Of a stretch of DNA of 64,000 nt, positions 54,395 to 63,144 are shown one piece after another; positions within the stretch are counted from its first letter, which is position 1; each line of letters starts with the position of its first letter. The notes beneath the pieces were generated by a model. That model was not told the DNA's origin, made no database searches, and saw only the letters and a program-made list of their open reading frames with translations. The stretch is from Lama glama. Lineage: Eukaryota. Location: assembly GCA_028534125.1 (NCBI GenBank), contig CM052828.1:60326001-60390000 (forward strand), read 5' to 3'. Made by a program: the position numbers and the translations under genes.

Positions 54395-57139
54395 GTGACT
54401 AGTTTCTGCTGAAGCTCACGGCAAACATCTGACTGAAGGGTGATGGGAAGCAGGGCTGTGCCTTGGGCTGGGCTCCCCGCCGCCCGTGACATCCAGCGCC
54501 GACAGCCTCGGTCTCCGCATGTCCCCCTGCGGTGGGCAGGAGTGGGGAAGGATACTCTGCAGAGTATCCGGCCTGTGCTGCTCCGCATTCCAGAAGCTTC
54601 TACACTGCGCCACCTCTCTGTCAGCCAGGACGCCCACCATCACAGGGCAGGGGGAGCCGGAGACGCTCACTGCTCTTCTGTGGGGTTGGGGAGGAGGACC
54701 TCCAGACGTATGCTGGGGCTGGCTCTGGGCCACCCTCCCTGGCACAGAGGCCCTGTCAGGGCATCTCTCCCAGGCCATCTCCTCAGAAGGACTCTTGGAG
54801 CTTCCGAGGGTCCCCCGGAGCAGGGAAGAACACAAGGCTGTGATTGTCCTACTCGGGTGCTCCAAGCAGGCTGGAAGGGAAATGGCTTCCCTCTTCCTCT
54901 GCCCTCTGCAGGCCCTCGGTGGCCCTCAGCCACCCAGGGGGTGGGTAGCCGCCGTCCCGCCAGACCCAGCGCCTTTGCTCGGGGCCTTCACCCACGGCTT
55001 TCCAGACGCCCTCTCCTGCCGGGTGTCCCCTGGGGTCCCACACAGTAGCCCCTAGAAAACCCTGGAGACCGCAGGGATGCAGAAGCCGGAGCAGGGAAAC
55101 GTCTGTCCAGCCCGGCCCCGCCCCATTTTGTTCTCTCCCCTTTGCTTCCCACTCAGCCAAAGACCCTGCGGGGACGGGGACAGTGGCGACGGCCACTCCG
55201 AGCCCAGCCGGTGCCCCATGCGCCCCTGTGGACCCTTTGTTCCGGGTGTCGTCAGCACTGCTGTGAAGCCAAGACTGCCTCCTGAAGGGCTTCCCCGCAT
55301 CTCGTCTCTGTCGGAAGCGTGACCCTCAAACGTGAGACGGAGCAGAGATCGCAGACCCTGTGAGCCCTGTCAACCAGGTGTGACAGTGCCATCTCCTCAA
55401 ATTGCCGCTAATCTACCAGGGGCCGTGCTGTCTGCAGCCTCCCTTGCGCTGTTTGCTCCCATTCGGTTACCGCTTTCGGTTTCCTTCTGAGGTGTCACTG
55501 TTTGCCATTTAGTCAGTAAGGAGAAGCGTGCGAGGGCTTCAGGCATGCGGATCTGGGGAGCTGGGAAGAGCCGACTGGCTGTTCAGGGAGGACGGTCTTG
55601 CTGAGGGTGGTGAGAGCTGGAGAGAGAGTGCCCCTCCGTCCTGGGAACAGCCTTCTAATTATGTCGTCAGGCTTGCTGGCGAGCTCTTTCCCTGTGCCGT
55701 TGAGAAACCGTGTTCTGTGTTAAGGAGATTACCAGATTGTGATGCTGTTTGCTGATTACTTTTTATTGTTTAAAGAATTTGGATGTATTAAACCAAACAT
55801 TAAAAAGTGATTCACATGGAGCGTAATTACTGGAGATGAGGCTGGGGGACACGGGTGGGTGGGAGGGGAGGGAGGAGATGGCGTTTGGGGGCTCTCACGG
55901 GGCCAGTGGGGCACAGGCAGGGACCCCATGTCAGTGTGACAGACGCAGGTGCTGATGGATACAGCTGGAAGGGTCGGGAGCCGGGTGGCAGAGAGGTGCA
56001 GCTGTAGGTTTCTGAGTGAAACAAACATTTCCAGGTGAGAGATGTTCCTTACTGAGCAGGAGAAATGAGCCATTTGAATTGTGCGCAAACACGCTGTCCT
56101 GGTGCCCGCCCTTCCCGCTGGGAGAGAGAACCAGAGCAGCGAGTAGGGGAGCCTGCCCTGAACGGCCCCTCCCATGTGGGCTGCCAACCCCCCCAGGGCC
56201 CCCTCTGATCTCAGACCCACTTCTGGGGGAGACAGTCGGGGACCAGGGGAACAGGCTGCACACTCTCCCTGCCTGTCCATCGCTCGTGGGCACCAGTCTT
56301 CATGCCACACCGTCTACTACCTGCTAATGTAAATAATAAACAGCCCGGAGCTTTGTTTCCAGCTCCACGTGAACACAAAGGGCACAAGAGTGGGTATCGA
56401 AGGATTTCATGGCAGGTCCCATCAAGGGAGTGCACAGTGAACCATGGCTGTTTGCGCCGTTTGCCGCCCGGGAGCGGGCGGCAGTCCTGGGCCGTGTCCT
56501 GCCCGCCGGCCCACAGCCAGGCGCTCCTCAGGAGGAGCTGCAGTAGGATTTGGGTTGATTCTGACAGATCCTGCAATTGTCAAGTTTGAACTGACGCATA
56601 GGTGCTCCGGTGTCACCGCCCTGGTGTGTCTGTAAGAGCAGGAGGTGGGCCAAGGGCTTCTCCCACAGGCGACAAGCTGCAGGCTGCGAGGACGCTCGCC
56701 AGCTACTGAGCGCTCGTGGGCCGGAGGCTGCCGGGCATCAGGGAGGCGTGAATGGCGCCGTGGCAGCGTCGGTGTGGGCAGAGCTCGGCTGGGAGGCCGG
56801 GTCGGCCCCTCCTCTCTCAATCTGGGCTCCCGGAACTGCAAATAGGAGCAACCGTTTACTTTGGAGATGTTGTAAGGCTGAAAGAAGTTTTGTTTCTTTC
56901 TTTCCTTTTTTGTTTCTTGTTTTTTTTTTTGAATGGACAAGACATGCACAAAATTCGAAAGATACCAAAAAGACCCATCTCCTGATAAGTTCTTTGATTT
57001 GTCAATTTGTGAAGCCCCGCCCCCGTTCACATTTTGGAATGGGACCCGGGAATGGGACTCACTCCACATGGAACCATAAACCCAGGGAGAAGGGGGACCT
57101 GCAAGAACGTTCCCTTGTCTGGTTGTGGGGATCACCATA

Positions 57140-57715
57140 TACCGCTTAGCCGGCTGTTGTTGGGTTAGTGTACCATTTCACACAGCCTCGAATGCTGCGG
57201 TGGGTTCTCTGGACACAGGCATTTTGCACACGGGCCAGTGTATATAAGAGAGCAATCCCCTGAAGTGCAATTTGGGGGTCGAAGCGTGTATGCAGTTTTT
57301 GATCGGGAGATTGCCAAACTGCTCTGCACGGATTCTGCACTGACTCGCCCCCACCCCCAGTCCCTGGATCCGCCATCAGCACCAGCCTAGGGTTTGTCAC
57401 ACGTTTGGCCTTTGCCAGCCTGAGAGGGGAATGGTGGTGTCTCACTACAGTTTCAATCTGCGTTTCTCTTTTCATGAGGAAGATGGGGAGTTTCACGTGC
57501 GGGAGGCACTTGTGTTTCATTCCCTGAGAACCGTCTGCCCGCACCCTGCCGTCTGTTCTGCTGGTTTGGTCTTCGGCTTATTGATTCGGAGAAGTTCTTT
57601 ATCTCCCAGACAAATTAGCACCTTATAAATGAGTTCCACTGTTTTGATCCACTTAGTCATTTGTCTTTTCTCTTTGTTCCTATTCCTTTCTGTAATTCAA
57701 AAATCTCTAACTTTT
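57140..57715 (-). mobile_element. Old L1 (L1ME-like) fragment, first part
   Basis: 'gattgccaaactgctctgc', 'tttgccagcctgagagggggaatggtggtgtctcactacagtttcaatctgcgtttctct', 'ttattgattcggagaagttctttat'. Confidence 0.8.
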
Positions 57716-57719
57716 TTAT

Positions 57720-58760
57720 GTAAGGTGAGGCAAAAATTTCTTAGGCATGACACCAGAAGCATGATCCAAGGAAGAAAAAATGACAAATTGAACATAAAAA
57801 AAACTTCTGCTCTTCTAAGGCCGCTGGTAAGACAATGGAAGGACAAGTCACCGACTGAGGAGAAATATTTGCAAGTCATATATCTGATGAAGGGTTTGCA
57901 TCCAGAATACGTAAGGCGCTTTTAGAACTTAATAATAAAAAGACAATGACCCAACTTTTAAAACGGGTTAAAGCTGTGAATAGACACTTCACCAAAAAAG
58001 AGACCTAAGTGGCCAGCGAGCGTGTAACAGGCGCGCGGCTGCTCCTCGCCGGGCCGCGCGCCCACCCGCAGCGAGGCCGCGCCCGCGCCCGCGCCCGCGC
58101 CCGCCAGGACGGCTGCCCGCGGACGCGCTGCAGGACGGGTGTCGGTGAGGATGTGGGGAAACGGGAGCCCTCGCAAGGTGCGAGGAATGAGAGGTGGCGC
58201 AGCTGCCTTGGGGAACGTTTTGGCCGTTCCCCTAAGAAGTCCAGCCGCCCACCGTGTGAGCCAGCCGCCCACCGTAGGTGTCCTCCGGGGGGGGACCCGC
58301 GTGCCCGCCCAGACGCGCGCGCCCCGGGCCCTGCGGCAGCGTTGCGTCGTAGCCCCAGGTGGGAGGGGACCCAAGCGTCCCCCGGCGGCGCGTGGGCGGA
58401 CGCGTCCTGGGGCGCCGCGCTGTGCGGCGCCTGTGAGTCGGGAGGACAGAGGACCAAGCCTGTGATACACACGGCGACAGCTGCGTGAGTGAAAGCGACC
58501 AGGCAGGGCGCGCCCCGCGTGGCTCCGGTTGCTCGGCCCTCTGGAAAAGGCGACCTGCCCCTCGGTGCCAGAGAGCAGGGCGGAGCTGCTGGGGGAGCCG
58601 AGGGGGGAGCGGGAGCAGCCGGAGGGCGGGGGACCGACCCTGGGCAGAGGCCACGAGGGGACCCCGGGCGTGCCTGCGGCCCGCGGACGGCGACTGTCTC
58701 GACTGGTGACGCCGCCAGGCCGCGCGCTCCTGCATCTGGGCCTGCTGCCCGCAGCGTGCT
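57720..58760 (+). mobile_element. L1M (MC/MD-like) ORF2 3' end and 3' UTR nested in the older antisense L1
   Basis: AT-rich part 'ggcaaaaatttcttaggcatgacaccagaagcatgatcc...gagaaatatttgcaagtcatatatctgatgaaggg...gaatagacacttcaccaaaaaaga' continues colinearly into GC-converted L1 sequence ('gtgaggatgtggggaaacgggagccctc', 'gagtgaaag', 'ctggaaaaggc'). Confidence 0.88.
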
Positions 58761-58800
58761 CCCCGGCTGACTGCGCAGGAAGGGGGGCTGTACGGAGCGC
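58009..58800. promoter_or_regulatory. CpG island derived from L1 sequence
   Basis: By eye the densest CpG/GC stretch in the window, including (GCCCGC)n at about 58079-58103; it keeps L1 colinearity. Confidence 0.75.
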
Positions 58801-58939
58801 CTGACTTCTCTTTACGGACTGTGGGTCTCGTGGCGATTCTTTCCTCACTCCCACTTTGAGGAACAATCTATTTTGTGGGACGAGGCAGCGAGCCCTTAGG
58901 AATGCCGTCTCAGAGGGTTTCACTCTCCACGTGCGTGTA

Positions 58940-59750
58940 ACTCCAGCCGGGATTTGGAATAGTGTGAAGCAGAAATCCAGCTTCTTCCCCCACTTAGGCC
59001 AGCGTTCTTCATTGTAGAAATTAGTCTTTCTGTCCTTACTTGAAATGCTGTCTGTGTCACCTAGTAAATCCTGTATAAATTTGATTGTTTCTGGACTTTC
59101 CCTTTTGATGCTTTTGTCCCTTTTTGTACCGATACTGCATTTTTTTAAATTGAAGTTTAGTTAGTTTTTACAGTGTTGTGTTGGTTCCTAGTGTACAGCA
59201 TAGCGATCTAGTTTCATATATATATATATATATATGTAATTTTTCACATTGTCTTTGTTTTAGGTTAGTACGAGTTCCTGAATTTAGCTCCCGTGCGGCA
59301 CAGTAGGAATGTCACATTGTTTGGATTACTGTATATATATTTTAATGTTTAACATGGAGAGTCTATAACAAGTTCCTTACTACTTTCAATTTTCAGAGTG
59401 ATTTTCAAAGTAATTGAAAGTGAAGTTTAATTTTCAAAAACTCCTTGACTATTCTTGCTGATGACTTTTCCCTCTGAAATTTAGAATCCGTATTTTGGTT
59501 CAGCGAGTCCTCCTTGCGCCTTTCTGGAGGTGGCAGAGCGTTAGCTGCAGGCTGTCATTAATGGCACAGGTCGTCTCGCGGAGGACTGACCTCCTTGTGC
59601 TCTCGGGTCTTCCCAGCAGAGACTCTGCTTATCTCAGAACCCTTTCCACTTACTTGTCCTTTTTCACATCTTCCAGTAGTATTTTCATTTTCTTCGTATA
59701 AATCTTGTGCAGTTTCCTTTTTCAGTTAAACACGTATTTTAAGACCCAAG
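58940..59750 (-). mobile_element. Old L1 (L1ME-like) fragment, second part
   Basis: 'ttgaaatgctgtctgtgtcac', 'gtttctggactttc', 'cttgactattcttgct...tgaaatttagaatc', 'ttcttcgtataaatcttgtgca' continue the antisense L1 ORF2 seen before 57715. Confidence 0.65.
59140..59309 (-). mobile_element. Short camelid/cetartiodactyl L1 3' end with (TA)n
   Basis: 'tttttttaaattgaagtttagttagtttttacagtgttgtgttggttcctagtgtacagcatagcgat...(ta)n...cacagtagga'. Confidence 0.85.
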
Positions 59751-59816
59751 CTGCCTTGTGGAAATTTAAAATAAGATGGTTTCATCGGAGAAGTAGCAAA
59801 ATAATCACATGTCAGC

Positions 59817-60720
59817 TTTTGTTTTATTATGGAAGTAGAGTTGATTTACCACCTTACATTAGTTTCAGGTGTGGAGCGCAGTGGTTCAGTACTTCTACAG
59901 ATTATACTCCACTGAAAGTCACTACAGGGTGACGGCTGTAGTTCCCTGCGCTGCACCGTGCATCCTTGTTGCTCATCTGTTTTGCGTACAGCAGTCATGT
60001 CTATTCATCCCCCACACCGTCTAGCCCCTCCCCACGCCCCTCCCCACTGGGAACCACTGATTTGCATTCTGTGTCTGTGGGTTTGTTTTGCATATACATT
60101 AATTTGTATTATTTTCAGATTCTGCACGTAAATGATATCGTACAGTATTTGCTGTTGTCTGACTTAACTCAGTGTGATCATCTCTAGGTCCATCCATGTT
60201 GCTGCAAATGTCAATAGTTCACGCTTTTTACGGCTGAGTAGTATTCCACTGCATAAATATACCACATCTTTATCCAGTCGTCTGCTGATGGATGTTTAGG
60301 TTGCTCCCATATCTTGGCTTTTATAAATAGTGCTCTGAACATGGGGTGCATTATCTTTTTGAATTAGTATTTTTGTTTTTTCCAGGTGCAGCCCTAGTAG
60401 TGGGGTTGCTGGATCATATGGTAACTTTGTGTTTTTTTCAGGACCCTCCATACTGTTCTCCAATGTGGCTGCGCCAGCTTACACTCCCACGAGCAGAGCG
60501 GGAGGGCGCCCTTCTCCCCACACGCTCTCCAGCACGTGTTATCTGTAGGCTTCCCGACGGCGTCAACCTCAGAGGCGCGAGGTGGTGGTTCAGTGTTGAT
60601 TTGCTTTTCCCTGGTGGTCAGTGATGTTGAGCGTCTTTTCATGTGCCTGTTGGCCATCTTTGTGTCTTTGGAGAAATGCCTATTTAAGCCCTCTGCCCAT
60701 TTTTGATTTTTTTTTTTGTT
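59817..60720 (-). mobile_element. L1 (L1MA9/cetartiodactyl type) 3' end
   Basis: 'gaagtagagttgatttac...ttagtttcaggtgt', 'tctctaggtccatccatgttgctgcaaatg', 'ggctgagtagtattccact'. Minus-strand ORF 60394-60657 starts MANRHMKRRSTSL, like L1 ORF2 MANRHMKRCSTSL. Confidence 0.95.
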
Positions 60721-60731
60721 TGTTTAATCAC

Positions 60732-60820
60732 AGGTCAGTCTTGGTTTCGACATCCAGTCTGTGGCTTACTAACCAGGTCTCAGCCCGTTACTTAACCTCT
60801 CTGAGTCTCAGCTACTGTGG
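60732..60820 (+). mobile_element. MIR fragment
   Basis: 'gttacttaacctctctgagtctcag' is the MIR core motif, preceded by 'cttactaacc'. Confidence 0.6.
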
Positions 60821-63144
60821 GCCCCAAACCTCACACAGCTCTCTCCGGGCAAAGCCTGCAAGAGGCCTGGACTGCAGGGGTAGCGATTAGCAGGTGCTCA
60901 CAGGCCCCCGCCAGGGTCCGGCTGAGACCGCCTGCCCTCCCCACACCGGGGCGCCAGGACACAGGGCCTGCAGGAGGCCAGCGGCCTCCTCCACGACAGG
61001 GCCACCCCTCCAGCCCTTCCCGACGTCATGCTGTATTCTGATCCTTCAGTTCCTGGAGGCTCTGTTGGGGCAGGACGCAGAATCAGGGAGAAGCTGCTTG
61101 CCCGAGCACTGCCGTGAGACCCCGGTGTGAGCGGAGGGGGACAGTTGCTGCCAGGTGGCCTGTCCCCACGTCCCCTGACCGTCCGGGAGTAGGGCCCAAC
61201 AGGAAGAGGGGAGGCCTGGCTGTGGACAGAAGGGTGCAGCCGCGCTCGGCGGGAGCCTCCTCCCGGACGAGCAGCGTGGCTTTAGCTGCTGCGTGTAATG
61301 CGATAGTGGAGAAAGCACCACCACTGAGTCTCGGTGTTGGGGGCGGGGTGTGGCCGCGAGGAGGCCGGTGAGAACCGGCGCACAGCTGGGTGGGATCACC
61401 GCAGATGCAGGGTGTGGCCCCACAGTGGGTGCTGCGCGTGCAGACACGGACCCGGTGGCCCCGTCATCCCCTCCCTTAAGCCCTAGTGCCCACCCGCCGG
61501 TGAGAGGGGTAGGTGACAACTCAGGAGAGCACCCTGCTCCCCGCCCAAGTGCTTCAGAACCCCTGCCTGTGCCTTGTGGCGCAGTGGTTCTGGGGGGGCC
61601 TGGCGTGAGCGCAGGTTAGGGTGGGGGGACATCCTGATGCCCAGAGGAGCCAAGGTCTGTCCCGAGCCCCCTCCGGCCAGGCCAGTGCCCTGGGCCCCGC
61701 CCCTCTGCTCTCGTGTCTGGGTTCAGGTGCTCCTTTGTGGGTAAGAGCACCTCCTGGGCTAGGACATGTGCTCCGTGAGGATGGGGAGCTCTGGGGGCAC
61801 CCCTGGACTGGAGCAGAATCCCTGGGGCGTGCTGGGTGCTTAACAAAGAGCGAGGAATGAAAACCAGGGAGGGAGGGAGCACCCACCCTGGAGAAGACAG
61901 AGTCCATCTTGCGAAGCCCTGTCTTGGTGGGTGATGAGCAGTCTGTCAGCCAGACCAGGGTTCACATGCACCGACTGTGTTCTGGGACCCCAGCCTGCAG
62001 TTACAGGCAGAAGCGCTTTATCACTAAGGTACACAGTGATTCATGCTGAGAATGTAGTTAAAGTATCGTGGCAGTTTAAAAATGACACGCCATCAGGGTA
62101 ACGCAGCGGAGTGGCTCGTTGAGACTGAGCGCTTCCTGCTCGCCTGCAGCGCGGTCAGCGCATGACAGTGAGCGCTCTCGCCTGACACGTGGCTGCACAC
62201 GTGAATACACCACCTCACGTGCCACGCCTTGGACTCTGGGCAGGTGACCCTTGAAGATTGCTGTGGGACCCAGAGGTGTCTAAGGGCAGCGTCCTGAGTT
62301 CACCCTGGGTTTGAAGTCCCAGCCCCTGGAGGAGGGCAGCCTCCTCTGAACATCAGCCCTGGTCCGTCCGTCCGTGCGAAGACGTGCTGCACACCCGCTT
62401 GGCAACCTTTGCCTCTGTCCTTTTGCAGATTACACAGGTTGGGATTCTGAGACCCGAACGAGGCTCTGAGCCCTGTGCTGATGGCTGGGAGGGGTCTCAG
62501 GGACCCTTCGAGTGCAGCCGCGGAGGTAGGGGCCCAGGGGAGGGGGAGGGTTAGCCCCAGGCTCTGCCCTCCTGGTCCCCGCAGGGCAGACATGCTGGCC
62601 TGGAATCAGGGCTCGGCCGCTTCTCCACTTCGTAGGGGTCTGGGAACAACGATGTACGGTCAGTACCACCCAGAGCTCCCGACACCGACTGAGAACTTAC
62701 CCTGACCGTCCCACCACCTTGGCTGCCTCAGACTTTTCTGGGGGCTGTGTCAGGATGCGGATGCTGGCCCCTGGGGTTCTGGTCCCTGGGTCCAGCCCTC
62801 ATGGGCTCTAGGATGCCCCAGCTGCCGGTCTGGACGCCCTGGACACCTGCTGCCTCTGCGGGGTCGCACCAGCCCTCGCGCTGCTGACGCGCCGGGGCTC
62901 AGGCATCCGTCCCAGAGCCATCACTGTTATCCCTTTGTGTTAACAAGAAATAAGACAGGAAAAGAGAACAAAGACAAACCAGCAGAAAAGCCCAAGAGGA
63001 GAGTGACAGTTTGCTCAGGCGCCCACACCGGGCACTGACCTGCGGGCCTGGGTCCTCCCCTGGCACACCGAGGGCGGGCACAGGGGTTAACGCGGATCGA
63101 GACTGCCTCCCGGGCCTGAACCACCATGGCAGTGCTTCCCAGGG

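What the first reader, a model, noticed from the sequence alone, without database searches (positions are those of the whole stretch)
57720..58800. An old L1 rewritten into a CpG island: probable fossil of a strong GC-biased gene conversion hotspot
Seen: one continuous + strand L1 is ordinary AT-rich sequence up to about 58008, then becomes extremely GC/CpG-rich while staying colinear with L1. Against the remembered L1M consensus most changes are A/T to G/C: ATGGCCAATAAGCACATG to GTGGCCAGCGAGCGTGTA (58009); CCCAAATGTCCATCAACAGGTGAATGGATAAAC to CCCAAGCGTCCCCCGGCGGCGCGTGGGCGGAC (about 58370); TGTATGATTCCATTT to CGCGTGGCTCCGGTT (about 58516); AGTGACAGAAAGCAGATCAG to GGTGCCAGAGAGCAGGGCGG (about 58564). 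Established: gBGC at long-lived recombination hotspots fixes weak-to-strong substitutions over tracts of roughly 1 kb and produces 'GC peaks', best known in PRDM9-less canids. Inference: a stable hotspot created a de novo orphan CpG island from AT-rich retroelement DNA, with an internal unconverted control in the same element. Such an island could keep attracting recombination or act as a lineage-specific promoter or enhancer.
Basis: partly seen in the sequence, partly recalled or inferred. Interest (0 to 1): 0.8.

Follow-up and report, generated by a model that had tools for sequence, protein, structure and literature searches.

The report
L1 fossil turned into CpG island
Half of an old L1 retrotransposon fragment has had most of its A/T bases replaced by G/C and now reads as a strong CpG island. 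[quoted passage not shown]

Summary
**Observation: mostly real.**
- 58009-58800 is 75.4% GC with CpG o/e 0.92, the strongest island in the window. The 289 bp just upstream are 37% GC.
- An independent L1 ORF2 copy in the same window (59820-60725, minus strand) aligns without a break across the boundary.
- L1 ancestry is significant for 58009-58289 (z about 10-13) and for 58290-58430 (colinear test, p = 0.002).
- L1 ancestry is not shown for 58431-58567 and is marginal for 58568-58800.

**Substitution pattern in the verified 422 bp.**
- 129 reference-A/T sites are G/C, against 19 the other way. In the AT-rich part the counts are 11 against 8.
- Transitions and transversions both contribute, and both strands are affected.
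- The regime changes within about 20 bp, near 58003-58018.

**Interpretation: partly supported.** Faster W-to-S change together with suppressed S-to-W change fits a fixation bias such as gBGC, with a time-averaged B of roughly 3-4. Recombination, methylation, PRDM9 status and outgroups could not be tested. The whole window is GC-rich (56%, CpG o/e 0.59), so this is a peak on a high regional background.

**Novelty.** "BGC islands" and dog "GC peaks" are already described. Unchecked first-reader notes report the same thing on other DNA of this genome.

The parts
57720..58008 (+). AT-rich 5' part of the + strand L1 ORF2 fragment. This is the unconverted internal control: GC 37%, CpG o/e 0.50.
   Evidence: Only L1 ORF2p hits in the PDB for 57898-58005 (residues 1051-1084). 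DNA alignment to the in-window L1 from 57934 and to the older minus-strand L1 from 57789. Composition.
58009..58430 (+). GC/CpG-rich stretch of demonstrated L1 ORF2 ancestry: GC 77%, CpG o/e 1.02, 64 CpG.
   Evidence: Continuous alignment across the boundary to L1 copy 60657-60240. W>S 129 against S>W 19. Change point at 58003-58018.
58431..58800 (+). Rest of the CpG island (GC 73.5%, o/e 0.80). L1 ORF2 tail / 3'UTR ancestry is plausible from length and position but not demonstrated.
   Evidence: Colinear tests give z = -0.5 for 58431-58567 and z = 1.7-2.2 for 58568-58800. Local tests are not significant. The best ungapped block, 58568-58607, falls on the G-rich tract of the reference L1, but that tract is low-complexity.
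58077..58104 (.). Perfect (CCGCGC)x4.7 microsatellite inside the converted L1, in the 94%-GC bin.
   Evidence: Tandem Repeats Finder.
58801..58980 (.). Right shoulder of the peak. GC is 52% and falls to 32-36% beyond 59000.
59820..60725 (-). Independent, better preserved L1 ORF2 C-terminus plus 3' end, used as the in-window reference. It carries its own smaller GC-enriched patch at 60450-60600 (60% GC).
   Evidence: PDB L1 ORF2p residues 1070-1163 at E = 4.6e-22 and 1197-1237 at E = 1.2e-9. Composition.
56905..57719 (-). Older minus-strand L1 ORF2 C-terminus lying head-to-head with the + copy. It is moderately GC-enriched (53%) at 56950-57550 and AT-rich (32-36%) next to the junction.
   Evidence: Top PDB hits are L1 ORF2p residues 1097-1180, weak at E = 0.15. 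It aligns to the + copy (z = 5.6) and to the reference copy (z = 5.2). T-rich tail at 56887-56931.

Best explanation
**What it is.** A 5'-truncated, old, sense-oriented L1 ORF2 fragment was neutral AT-rich DNA when it inserted.

**What happened.** From about 58009 rightwards, a fixation bias favouring G/C over A/T alleles has acted on it for a long time. The best candidate is GC-biased gene conversion during meiotic recombination, concentrated in a zone of about 0.8 kb. Roughly 60-75% of the original A/T sites are replaced, existing G/C sites are kept, and many new CpGs were created.

**What it is now.** The result meets the CpG-island criteria. Its CpG o/e of about 0.9-1.0 suggests it is hypomethylated in the germline, or under a drive strong enough to offset CpG decay.

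**Setting.** The zone sits in a regionally GC/CpG-rich, probably highly recombining, stretch of chromosome.

**Shown:** the L1 ancestry to 58430, the direction and spectrum of change, and the sharp boundary.

**Inferred:** that recombination is the agent, the methylation state, and any feedback in which a CpG island attracts PRDM9-independent breaks that add further GC.
For: 1. The same colinear L1 switches regime within about 20 bp. The W>S fraction per reference W site is 0.23-0.24 left of 58013 and 0.63-0.83 right of it.
2. W>S against S>W is 129:19 in 58009-58430, compared with 11:8 in the AT-rich part.
3. All four W>S types occur: A>G 28, A>C 21, T>C 9, T>G 6. This excludes one-strand A-to-I editing, and APOBEC editing runs in the wrong direction.
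4. Two shifts point the same way (inference).
   - W>S is about 3.9x faster than in the control after log correction.
   - S>W is about 0.22x the control. That reduction is not limited to CpG sites.
   - A fixation bias predicts both shifts. The standard gBGC fixation formula gives B of about 2.6-3.8.
5. Of 34 island CpGs with an aligned reference dinucleotide, 4 sit on a reference CpG and 14 on CA/TG. The other 16 sit on other dinucleotides, so they are de novo rather than merely preserved.
6. The setting is regional and patchy: window GC 56% and CpG o/e 0.59, with other L1 pieces nearby at 52-60% GC.
7. A relative's orthologue of the neighbouring L1 ORF (P0001, 88% identical) shows a lineage difference. 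It has A/T where the window has G/C at 10 inferred sites, against 1 the other way. Few of these are in CpG context.
8. The sequence is real. 16 DNA data sets from 4 closely related organisms and several studies hold 87-97% of the sampled words of 56500-60500.
9. This kind of feature is documented: 'biased gene conversion islands' (PMC8286816), dog GC peaks (PMC4053742), and GC* peaks at PRDM9-independent hotspots in most placentals (bioRxiv 10.1101/2023.11.17.567540).
Against: - There is no direct evidence of recombination, of allele-frequency skew or of methylation state.
- Ancestral states come from one in-window L1 copy of another subfamily, not from a consensus or an outgroup. Changes on the reference lineage are therefore mixed in.
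- The left edge is sharper (about 20 bp) than a simple decay from a hotspot centre would give.
- GC drops by about 20 points exactly at 58800. I read that position as the element's 3' end. A drop there could mean that part of the GC-richness belongs to the inserted DNA rather than to the position.
- A>S (62%) exceeds T>S (38%), p = 0.02. That is a mild strand asymmetry which pure gBGC does not predict.
- 370 bp of the island cannot be tied to L1.
Confidence: 0.62

Rival explanations
1. Composite origin. Only 58009 to about 58430 is converted L1. The remaining 370 bp (58431-58800) would be unrelated GC-rich DNA, such as a transplanted CpG-island piece, a GC-rich duplication or expanded simple sequence, that replaced the L1 tail. 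In that case the 'one continuous L1' picture is half right.
For: No significant alignment of 58431-58567 to either in-window L1. The GC step falls exactly at 58800. The putative target-site duplication is not significant (p = 0.10). Unchecked note s1-858438 reports a CpG-island cassette inside an L1 elsewhere in this genome.
Against: - With 75% of W sites replaced, detection against a different L1 subfamily is expected to fail.
- The length from ORF2p residue about 1085 at 58005 to 58800 fits the ORF2 tail (about 570 bp) plus a short 3'UTR.
- Small colinear seeds exist at 58347, 58451, 58486 and 58568.
- 58568-58800 is marginally above shuffles.
Confidence: 0.15
2. A germline-hypomethylated, transcription-factor-bound promoter or enhancer island. 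Local mutation or repair bias without meiotic recombination would have raised GC, with loss of CpG decay and perhaps selection for function adding to it.
For: - CpG o/e is 0.92-1.02, higher than the 'BGC island' class described as methylated and fast-deaminating (PMC8286816).
- The edges are sharp, like a chromatin domain.
- GC skew is positive (+0.09).
- RNA runs from reproductive tissue hold 16% of the words of 56500-60500. Where in the stretch those words lie is unknown.
Against: - Hypomethylation protects existing CpGs but does not turn 63-75% of A/T sites into G/C or create CpGs from AA/AC/AG.
- Selection on more than 100 individual sites is implausible.
- No homologue of any island ORF was found, and there is no Rfam family.
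- This rival is compatible with gBGC rather than exclusive of it, because hypomethylated islands are the default PRDM9-independent break sites.
Confidence: 0.13
3. The GC-rich state was inherited. On this reading the inserted or duplicated DNA was already GC-converted at a source locus and was moved here, so the position has no special property.
For: The extreme GC ends at the presumed element end, 58800. The element is younger than the L1 it seems to sit in, yet it is far more converted than that L1's adjoining flanks.
Against: - The left boundary lies inside the element, and the AT-rich valley spans the junction with the neighbouring L1 (57551-58008).
- The right flank outside the element is also raised (52%) compared with 32% further on.
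- No second copy exists in the window.
Confidence: 0.06
4. Assembly or sequencing artefact, for example a chimeric join at 58008.
For: The compositional switch is abrupt.
Against: The L1 alignment runs through the switch without a gap. Independent data sets from four related organisms hold 87-97% of the words of the 4-kb stretch.
Confidence: 0.02

Closest known systems
'Biased gene conversion islands', one of the CpG-island-like classes modelled in primates (summarised in PMC8286816, its reference 16)
   Same: CpG-island-like composition produced by W>S fixation bias rather than by selection. These islands often lie in GC-rich, highly recombining regions.
   Different: That class is described as highly methylated with rapid deamination. 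Here CpG o/e is about 0.9-1.0, which points to hypomethylation or a very strong drive. This case is also visibly written over a retrotransposon that carries an internal control.
Dog 'GC peaks' at PRDM9-independent recombination hotspots (definition and discussion in PMC4053742)
   Same: Peaks of very high GC about 1 kb long that overlap CpG islands and are attributed to gBGC at stable hotspots.
   Different: This species is not shown to lack PRDM9. The formal criterion (500 bp at least 1.5x the 10-kb background) is not met (1.34x), because the background is itself 57% GC.
GC* peaks at hypomethylated, promoter-like default hotspots in most placental mammals (Joseph et al., bioRxiv 10.1101/2023.11.17.567540)
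   Same: Offers a mechanism that does not need PRDM9 loss: breaks at hypomethylated CpG-rich sites leave sharp peaks of equilibrium GC.
   Different: That work concerns conserved promoter-like sites. Here the site would have arisen de novo in transposon DNA. No camelid was named in that paper's text or in its one held supplement.
CpG islands brought in by retrotransposition (PMC4509998)
   Same: A CpG island associated with LINE-derived DNA.
   Different: Judging from that paper's abstract, the island arrives with the retrotransposed DNA. Here the island lies in the normally AT-rich ORF2 3' region and arose by substitution after insertion.

Membership tests
LINE-1 (L1) ORF2 3' fragment | Sequence homology to the L1 ORF2 C-terminal region, in sense orientation and colinear | tested here: met
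   57898-58005 matches ORF2p 1051-1084 (weak E). 57934-58289 aligns to a firm in-window L1 at z = 18. 58290-58430 passes the colinear test at p = 0.002.
LINE-1 (L1) ORF2 3' fragment | Continuation to the L1 3' end with a poly(A) remnant and target-site duplication | tested here: inconclusive
   58431-58800 is not significantly L1. The candidate duplication 57707-57729 / 58801-58825 gives p = 0.10. No A-rich tail is left.
CpG island (sequence criteria) | At least 500 bp, GC at least 55%, CpG o/e at least 0.65 | tested here: met
   792 bp, GC 75.4%, o/e 0.92. CpG density is the highest of 48 relaxed-criteria stretches in the window, at 10.6 per 100 bp.
CpG island (functional sense) | Unmethylated in the germline; H3K4me3 or TSS activity | not testable with these tools
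No methylation data were available.
gBGC tract / BGC island | Excess of W>S over S>W substitutions relative to the ancestral sequence, clustered over about 1 kb | tested here: met
   129 against 19 in 58009-58430, compared with 11 against 8 in the adjoining control. Change point at 58003-58018.
gBGC tract / BGC island | The bias acts on all W>S types and both strands, and also lowers S>W (a fixation bias, not a mutation bias) | tested here: met
   A>G 28, A>C 21, T>C 9, T>G 6. S>W per site is 0.095 against 0.36 in the control. There is a mild A>T asymmetry (p = 0.02).
gBGC tract / BGC island | Coincides with elevated recombination; derived G/C alleles skewed to high frequency | not testable with these tools
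   No LD map, DMC1 data or polymorphism data were reachable.
Dog-type GC peak | GC of a 500-bp window at least 1.5x that of the surrounding 10 kb (PMC4053742) | tested here: not met
   The best ratio is 1.34 (0.764 / 0.569) at 58530.

The most novel reading that the evidence does not exclude
This genome, apparently a camelid, may use stable CpG-island-type (PRDM9-independent) hotspots heavily, in a dog-like manner. That would repeatedly manufacture new CpG islands out of AT-rich L1 fossils. Their edges would be sharp to within about 20 bp and would record the width of the break or conversion zone at near base-pair resolution. Several unchecked first-reader notes on other pieces of the same genome describe the same pattern.
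Probability: 0.2. Interest if true: 0.55.

Novelty: new member of a known kind. Interest (0 to 1): 0.35.

Why it matters
This is a clean natural experiment. One neutral element with a known AT-rich starting state is split by a boundary of about 20 bp into an untouched half and a half driven to 77% GC with CpG o/e near 1.

It shows how far a fixation bias can take junk DNA towards a CpG island without selection. It also gives a rough time-averaged strength, B of about 3-4.

If the pattern recurs genome-wide in this lineage, it bears on two questions: how much recombination in non-canid mammals uses CpG-island-type hotspots, and how orphan CpG islands are born. In itself the phenomenon is already described.

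Tried and rejected
**Searches that gave nothing usable**
- Pfam on seven stop-free translations of 57701-58801: nothing usable.
- PDB sequence search of the GC-rich ORF 58009-58485: no hit. Protein-level memory of L1 is erased there.
- Representative-library search with the old L1 ORF 57149-57577(-): only an orthologue (P0001) and three low-complexity false hits, which Pfam showed to be unrelated.
- The search for homologous proteins with the 321-aa and 160-aa island ORFs: no hit, so no orthologous ORFs and no gene. With the old L1 ORF it returned only P0001.
- Rfam on 57897-61000: nothing.
- Literature on PRDM9 in camelids: nothing useful.

There are therefore no read-level variants and no RNA placement.
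Three local scripts still read that stretch: two alignments and one base-composition count. Later alignments start at 57897 or stop at 57857.

**Analyses that failed or were inconclusive**
- blastn of the window against itself found no other copy.
- The older minus-strand L1 is too decayed to serve as a reference for the GC-rich part (z = 0.2).
- Three kinds of free local alignment of 58290-58830 were not above shuffles or control GC-rich segments: W>S-aware, log-odds-trained and ungapped-diagonal.
- My reading that the + L1 is nested in the minus-strand L1 was not confirmed. That reading has the host resuming at about 58820, with a target-site duplication.
  - The duplication gives p = 0.10.
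  - The host-right alignment is not significant.
  - The PDB search of 58780-59160(-) found no L1.

- I did not scan metagenome, viral or bacterial-genome collections for L1 copies. Such contigs could be human contamination that I could not recognise.
- No L1 consensus was built.

Full report
**1. What is in the sequence**

The window as a whole is unusual for a mammal: GC is 55-56% and CpG o/e is 0.59-0.60. A relaxed CpG-island caller marks 48 stretches in it.

Against that background, 58009-58800 still stands out:
- It is 792 bp, GC 75.4%, with 103 CpG, o/e 0.92 and GC skew +0.09.
- Its CpG density is the highest in the window (10.6 per 100 bp over 57891-58973).
- Immediately to the left, 57720-58008 is 37.4% GC with o/e 0.50.
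- In 50-bp bins GC goes 0.36, 0.68, 0.94 across 57950-58099.
- On the right it falls from 0.74 to 0.52 at 58800, and to 0.34-0.36 by 59000.
- A perfect (CCGCGC)x4.7 microsatellite lies at 58077-58104.

**2. Is it L1?**

I therefore used solved L1 ORF2p structures as a coordinate system and L1 copies inside the window as DNA references.

The references:
- A minus-strand copy at 59820-60725 is firmly L1. It matches ORF2p residues 1070-1163 at E = 4.6e-22 and 1197-1237 at E = 1.2e-9.
- The AT-rich part of the finding (57898-58005) hits only L1 ORF2p, at residues 1051-1084 (E = 0.25 for 36 aa).
- An older minus-strand copy at 56905-57719 hits ORF2p 1097-1180 weakly (E = 0.15, top four hits all L1).

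DNA alignment of the + copy to the 59820-60725 reference, judged against 50-bp block shuffles that keep local composition:
- 57934-58289 aligns with 60728-60382 in one piece, with no gap at the compositional switch, at z = 18.
- The GC-rich part alone gives z = 12.6 (58094-58289).

Beyond 58289, free local alignment fails under three schemes:
- plain scoring;
- W>S-tolerant scoring;
- scoring trained on the verified part.

Other GC-rich segments of the window score just as well in those tests.

A test that uses the colinearity prior (global alignment to the predicted partner segment) gives:
- z = 10.3 for the positive control 58009-58289;
- z = 3.1-4.2 (p = 0.002) for 58290-58430;
- z = -0.5 for 58431-58567;
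- z = 1.7-2.2 for 58568-58800.

Antisense, shifted and unrelated-segment controls lie at z = 0.1-0.6.

L1 ancestry is therefore shown for 58009-58430, which is 422 of the 792 bp. For the rest it is only plausible:
- The length fits about 190 remaining ORF2 codons plus a short 3'UTR.
- Small colinear seeds are present.
- The best ungapped block falls on the G-rich tract that follows ORF2 in the reference.

**3. Direction of change**

Only plain-scored alignments were used, to avoid circularity.

| Segment | Ref W, + copy S | Ref S, + copy W | Note |
|---|---|---|---|
| 58009-58289 | 64 | 18 | p = 3e-7 |
| 58290-58430 | 65 | 1 | 75% of reference W sites replaced |
| 57934-58008 (control) | 11 | 8 | |

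- Per site, W>S is 0.63 in the GC-rich part against 0.22 in the control. S>W is 0.095 against 0.36.
- The spectrum is A>G 28, A>C 21, T>C 9, T>G 6. Transitions and transversions both occur and both strands are hit. A sites are hit somewhat more than T sites (62% against 38%, p = 0.02).
- Of 34 island CpGs with an aligned reference dinucleotide, 4 sit on a reference CpG and 14 on CA/TG. The other 16 sit on other dinucleotides, so they are new.
- A maximum-likelihood single change point for W>S falls at 58003-58018 (log-likelihood gain 13.9).

Caveat: the reference is one copy of a different subfamily. It is itself GC-enriched at 60450-60600, which makes the counts for about 58094-58250 conservative.

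**4. Mechanism**

- Editing is excluded by direction (APOBEC) or by spectrum (ADAR would give A>G on one strand only).
- Germline hypomethylation alone preserves CpGs but cannot replace most A/T sites.
- Selection on more than 100 sites is implausible.
- A fixation bias predicts both observed shifts. After log correction W>S is about 3.9x faster and S>W is about 0.22x the control.
- With the standard gBGC fixation terms, B/(1-e^-B) and B/(e^B-1), these give B of about 3.8 and 2.6. This is my inference and it is rough, because the control has only 71 aligned sites.
- That is hotspot-level gBGC sustained for a long time.

The CpG o/e of about 1 suggests the island is now hypomethylated. That would fit the published picture in which hypomethylated CpG-rich sites are default, PRDM9-independent break sites with sharp GC* peaks in most placentals (bioRxiv 10.1101/2023.11.17.567540). 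Short conversion tracts confined to a chromatin-defined zone could explain the very sharp left edge. This last step is inference.

**5. Context**

The peak is not an island in ordinary DNA.
- The L1-rich patch 56905-60725 outside the island is patchy. GC is 53% at 56950-57550, 36% in a valley at 57551-58008 that spans the junction of two L1 copies, 52% at 58801-58980, 32% at 59000-59500, and 60% at 60450-60600.
- A predicted protein from another assembly (P0001, 109 aa, 88% identical) is the orthologue of the old L1 ORF at 57149-57475.
- At inferred differing nucleotides the window has G/C and the relative A/T 10 times, against 1 the other way. Most are outside CpG context.
- The two lineages therefore differ in process at this locus. 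The direction cannot be polarised without an outgroup.

The sequence is reproducible. 16 DNA data sets of about 2.1 Gb, from four closely related coded organisms and several studies, hold 87-97% of the sampled words of 56500-60500. This also means the GC-rich state predates their very recent divergence.

With the high GC, this suggests a distal chromosomal position. That is untested.

**6. Comparison with what is known**

- 'Biased gene conversion islands' are a recognised class of CpG-island-like sequence (PMC8286816).
- Dog GC peaks of about 1 kb at hotspots, overlapping CpG islands and possibly caused by gBGC, are described in PMC4053742.
- By that paper's criterion this peak reaches only 1.34x its 10-kb background, not 1.5x.
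- L1-associated CpG islands that arrive by retrotransposition (PMC4509998; abstract seen) are a different thing.
- First-reader notes on other pieces of this genome describe the same 'L1 rewritten to CpG island' pattern (s1-862768, s1-859332, s1-857495, s1-862009). They are unchecked and are not evidence, but they suggest a census is worthwhile.

**7. Limits**

- I did not fetch L1 copies from metagenome, viral or bacterial collections, because human contamination could not be recognised.
- The nested-insertion reading and the target-site duplication remain unconfirmed.

**Verdict**

This is a real and rather extreme example of a known process. The gBGC reading is the best available explanation, but the agent itself (recombination) is untested.

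Noticed in passing
window 1-64000: The whole 64-kb window is GC 56% with CpG o/e 0.59, far above typical mammalian bulk DNA. 48 stretches pass relaxed CpG-island criteria. This suggests a regional high-recombination (possibly distal chromosomal) regime.
   Followed up: partly
window 60450-60600 (minus-strand L1 59820-60725): A second, better preserved L1 ORF2 copy carries its own 150-bp GC-enriched patch (60% GC, CpG o/e 0.80). The patch falls in the same ORF2 segment that is converted in the finding, so some matches between the two copies may be parallel W>S changes.
   Followed up: partly
window 57149-57475 (-) and protein P0001: A Logan-assembly protein 88% identical to this decayed L1 ORF is the orthologue from a relative. 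At 10 inferred sites the window has G/C and the relative A/T, against 1 the other way (binomial p of about 0.01). This is a lineage difference in base-composition drive next to the island.
   Followed up: partly
window 56905-57719 (-), 58801-59140 (-): The + L1 seems to sit inside an older minus-strand L1 that resumes to its right, with a possible 17-19-bp target-site duplication (57707-57729 / 58801-58825). All differences in that duplication are A/T on the left and G/C on the right. None of this reached significance.
   Followed up: yes
window 57958-58923 (-): A 321-aa open reading frame spans the island on the minus strand, and three more ORFs of 155-167 aa overlap it. None has a homologue, so they look like stop-codon-poor GC-rich DNA rather than genes.
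   Followed up: yes
window 58232-58274: The motif CCAGCCGCCCACCGT occurs twice, 20 bp apart. Both copies align without a gap to different parts of the L1 reference, so the repeat seems to have arisen by convergent W>S change and not by duplication.
   Followed up: no
window 59100-59340: Another AT-rich fragment resembles, from memory, the antisense 3' end of the younger L1 type, with an (AT)10 microsatellite at 59216-59235. The patch 56900-60725 is a cluster of at least three or four L1 pieces.
   Followed up: no
window 56500-60500: Two RNA-seq runs labelled reproductive system hold 16% of the sampled words of this 4-kb stretch. Which part is transcribed could not be determined.
   Followed up: no
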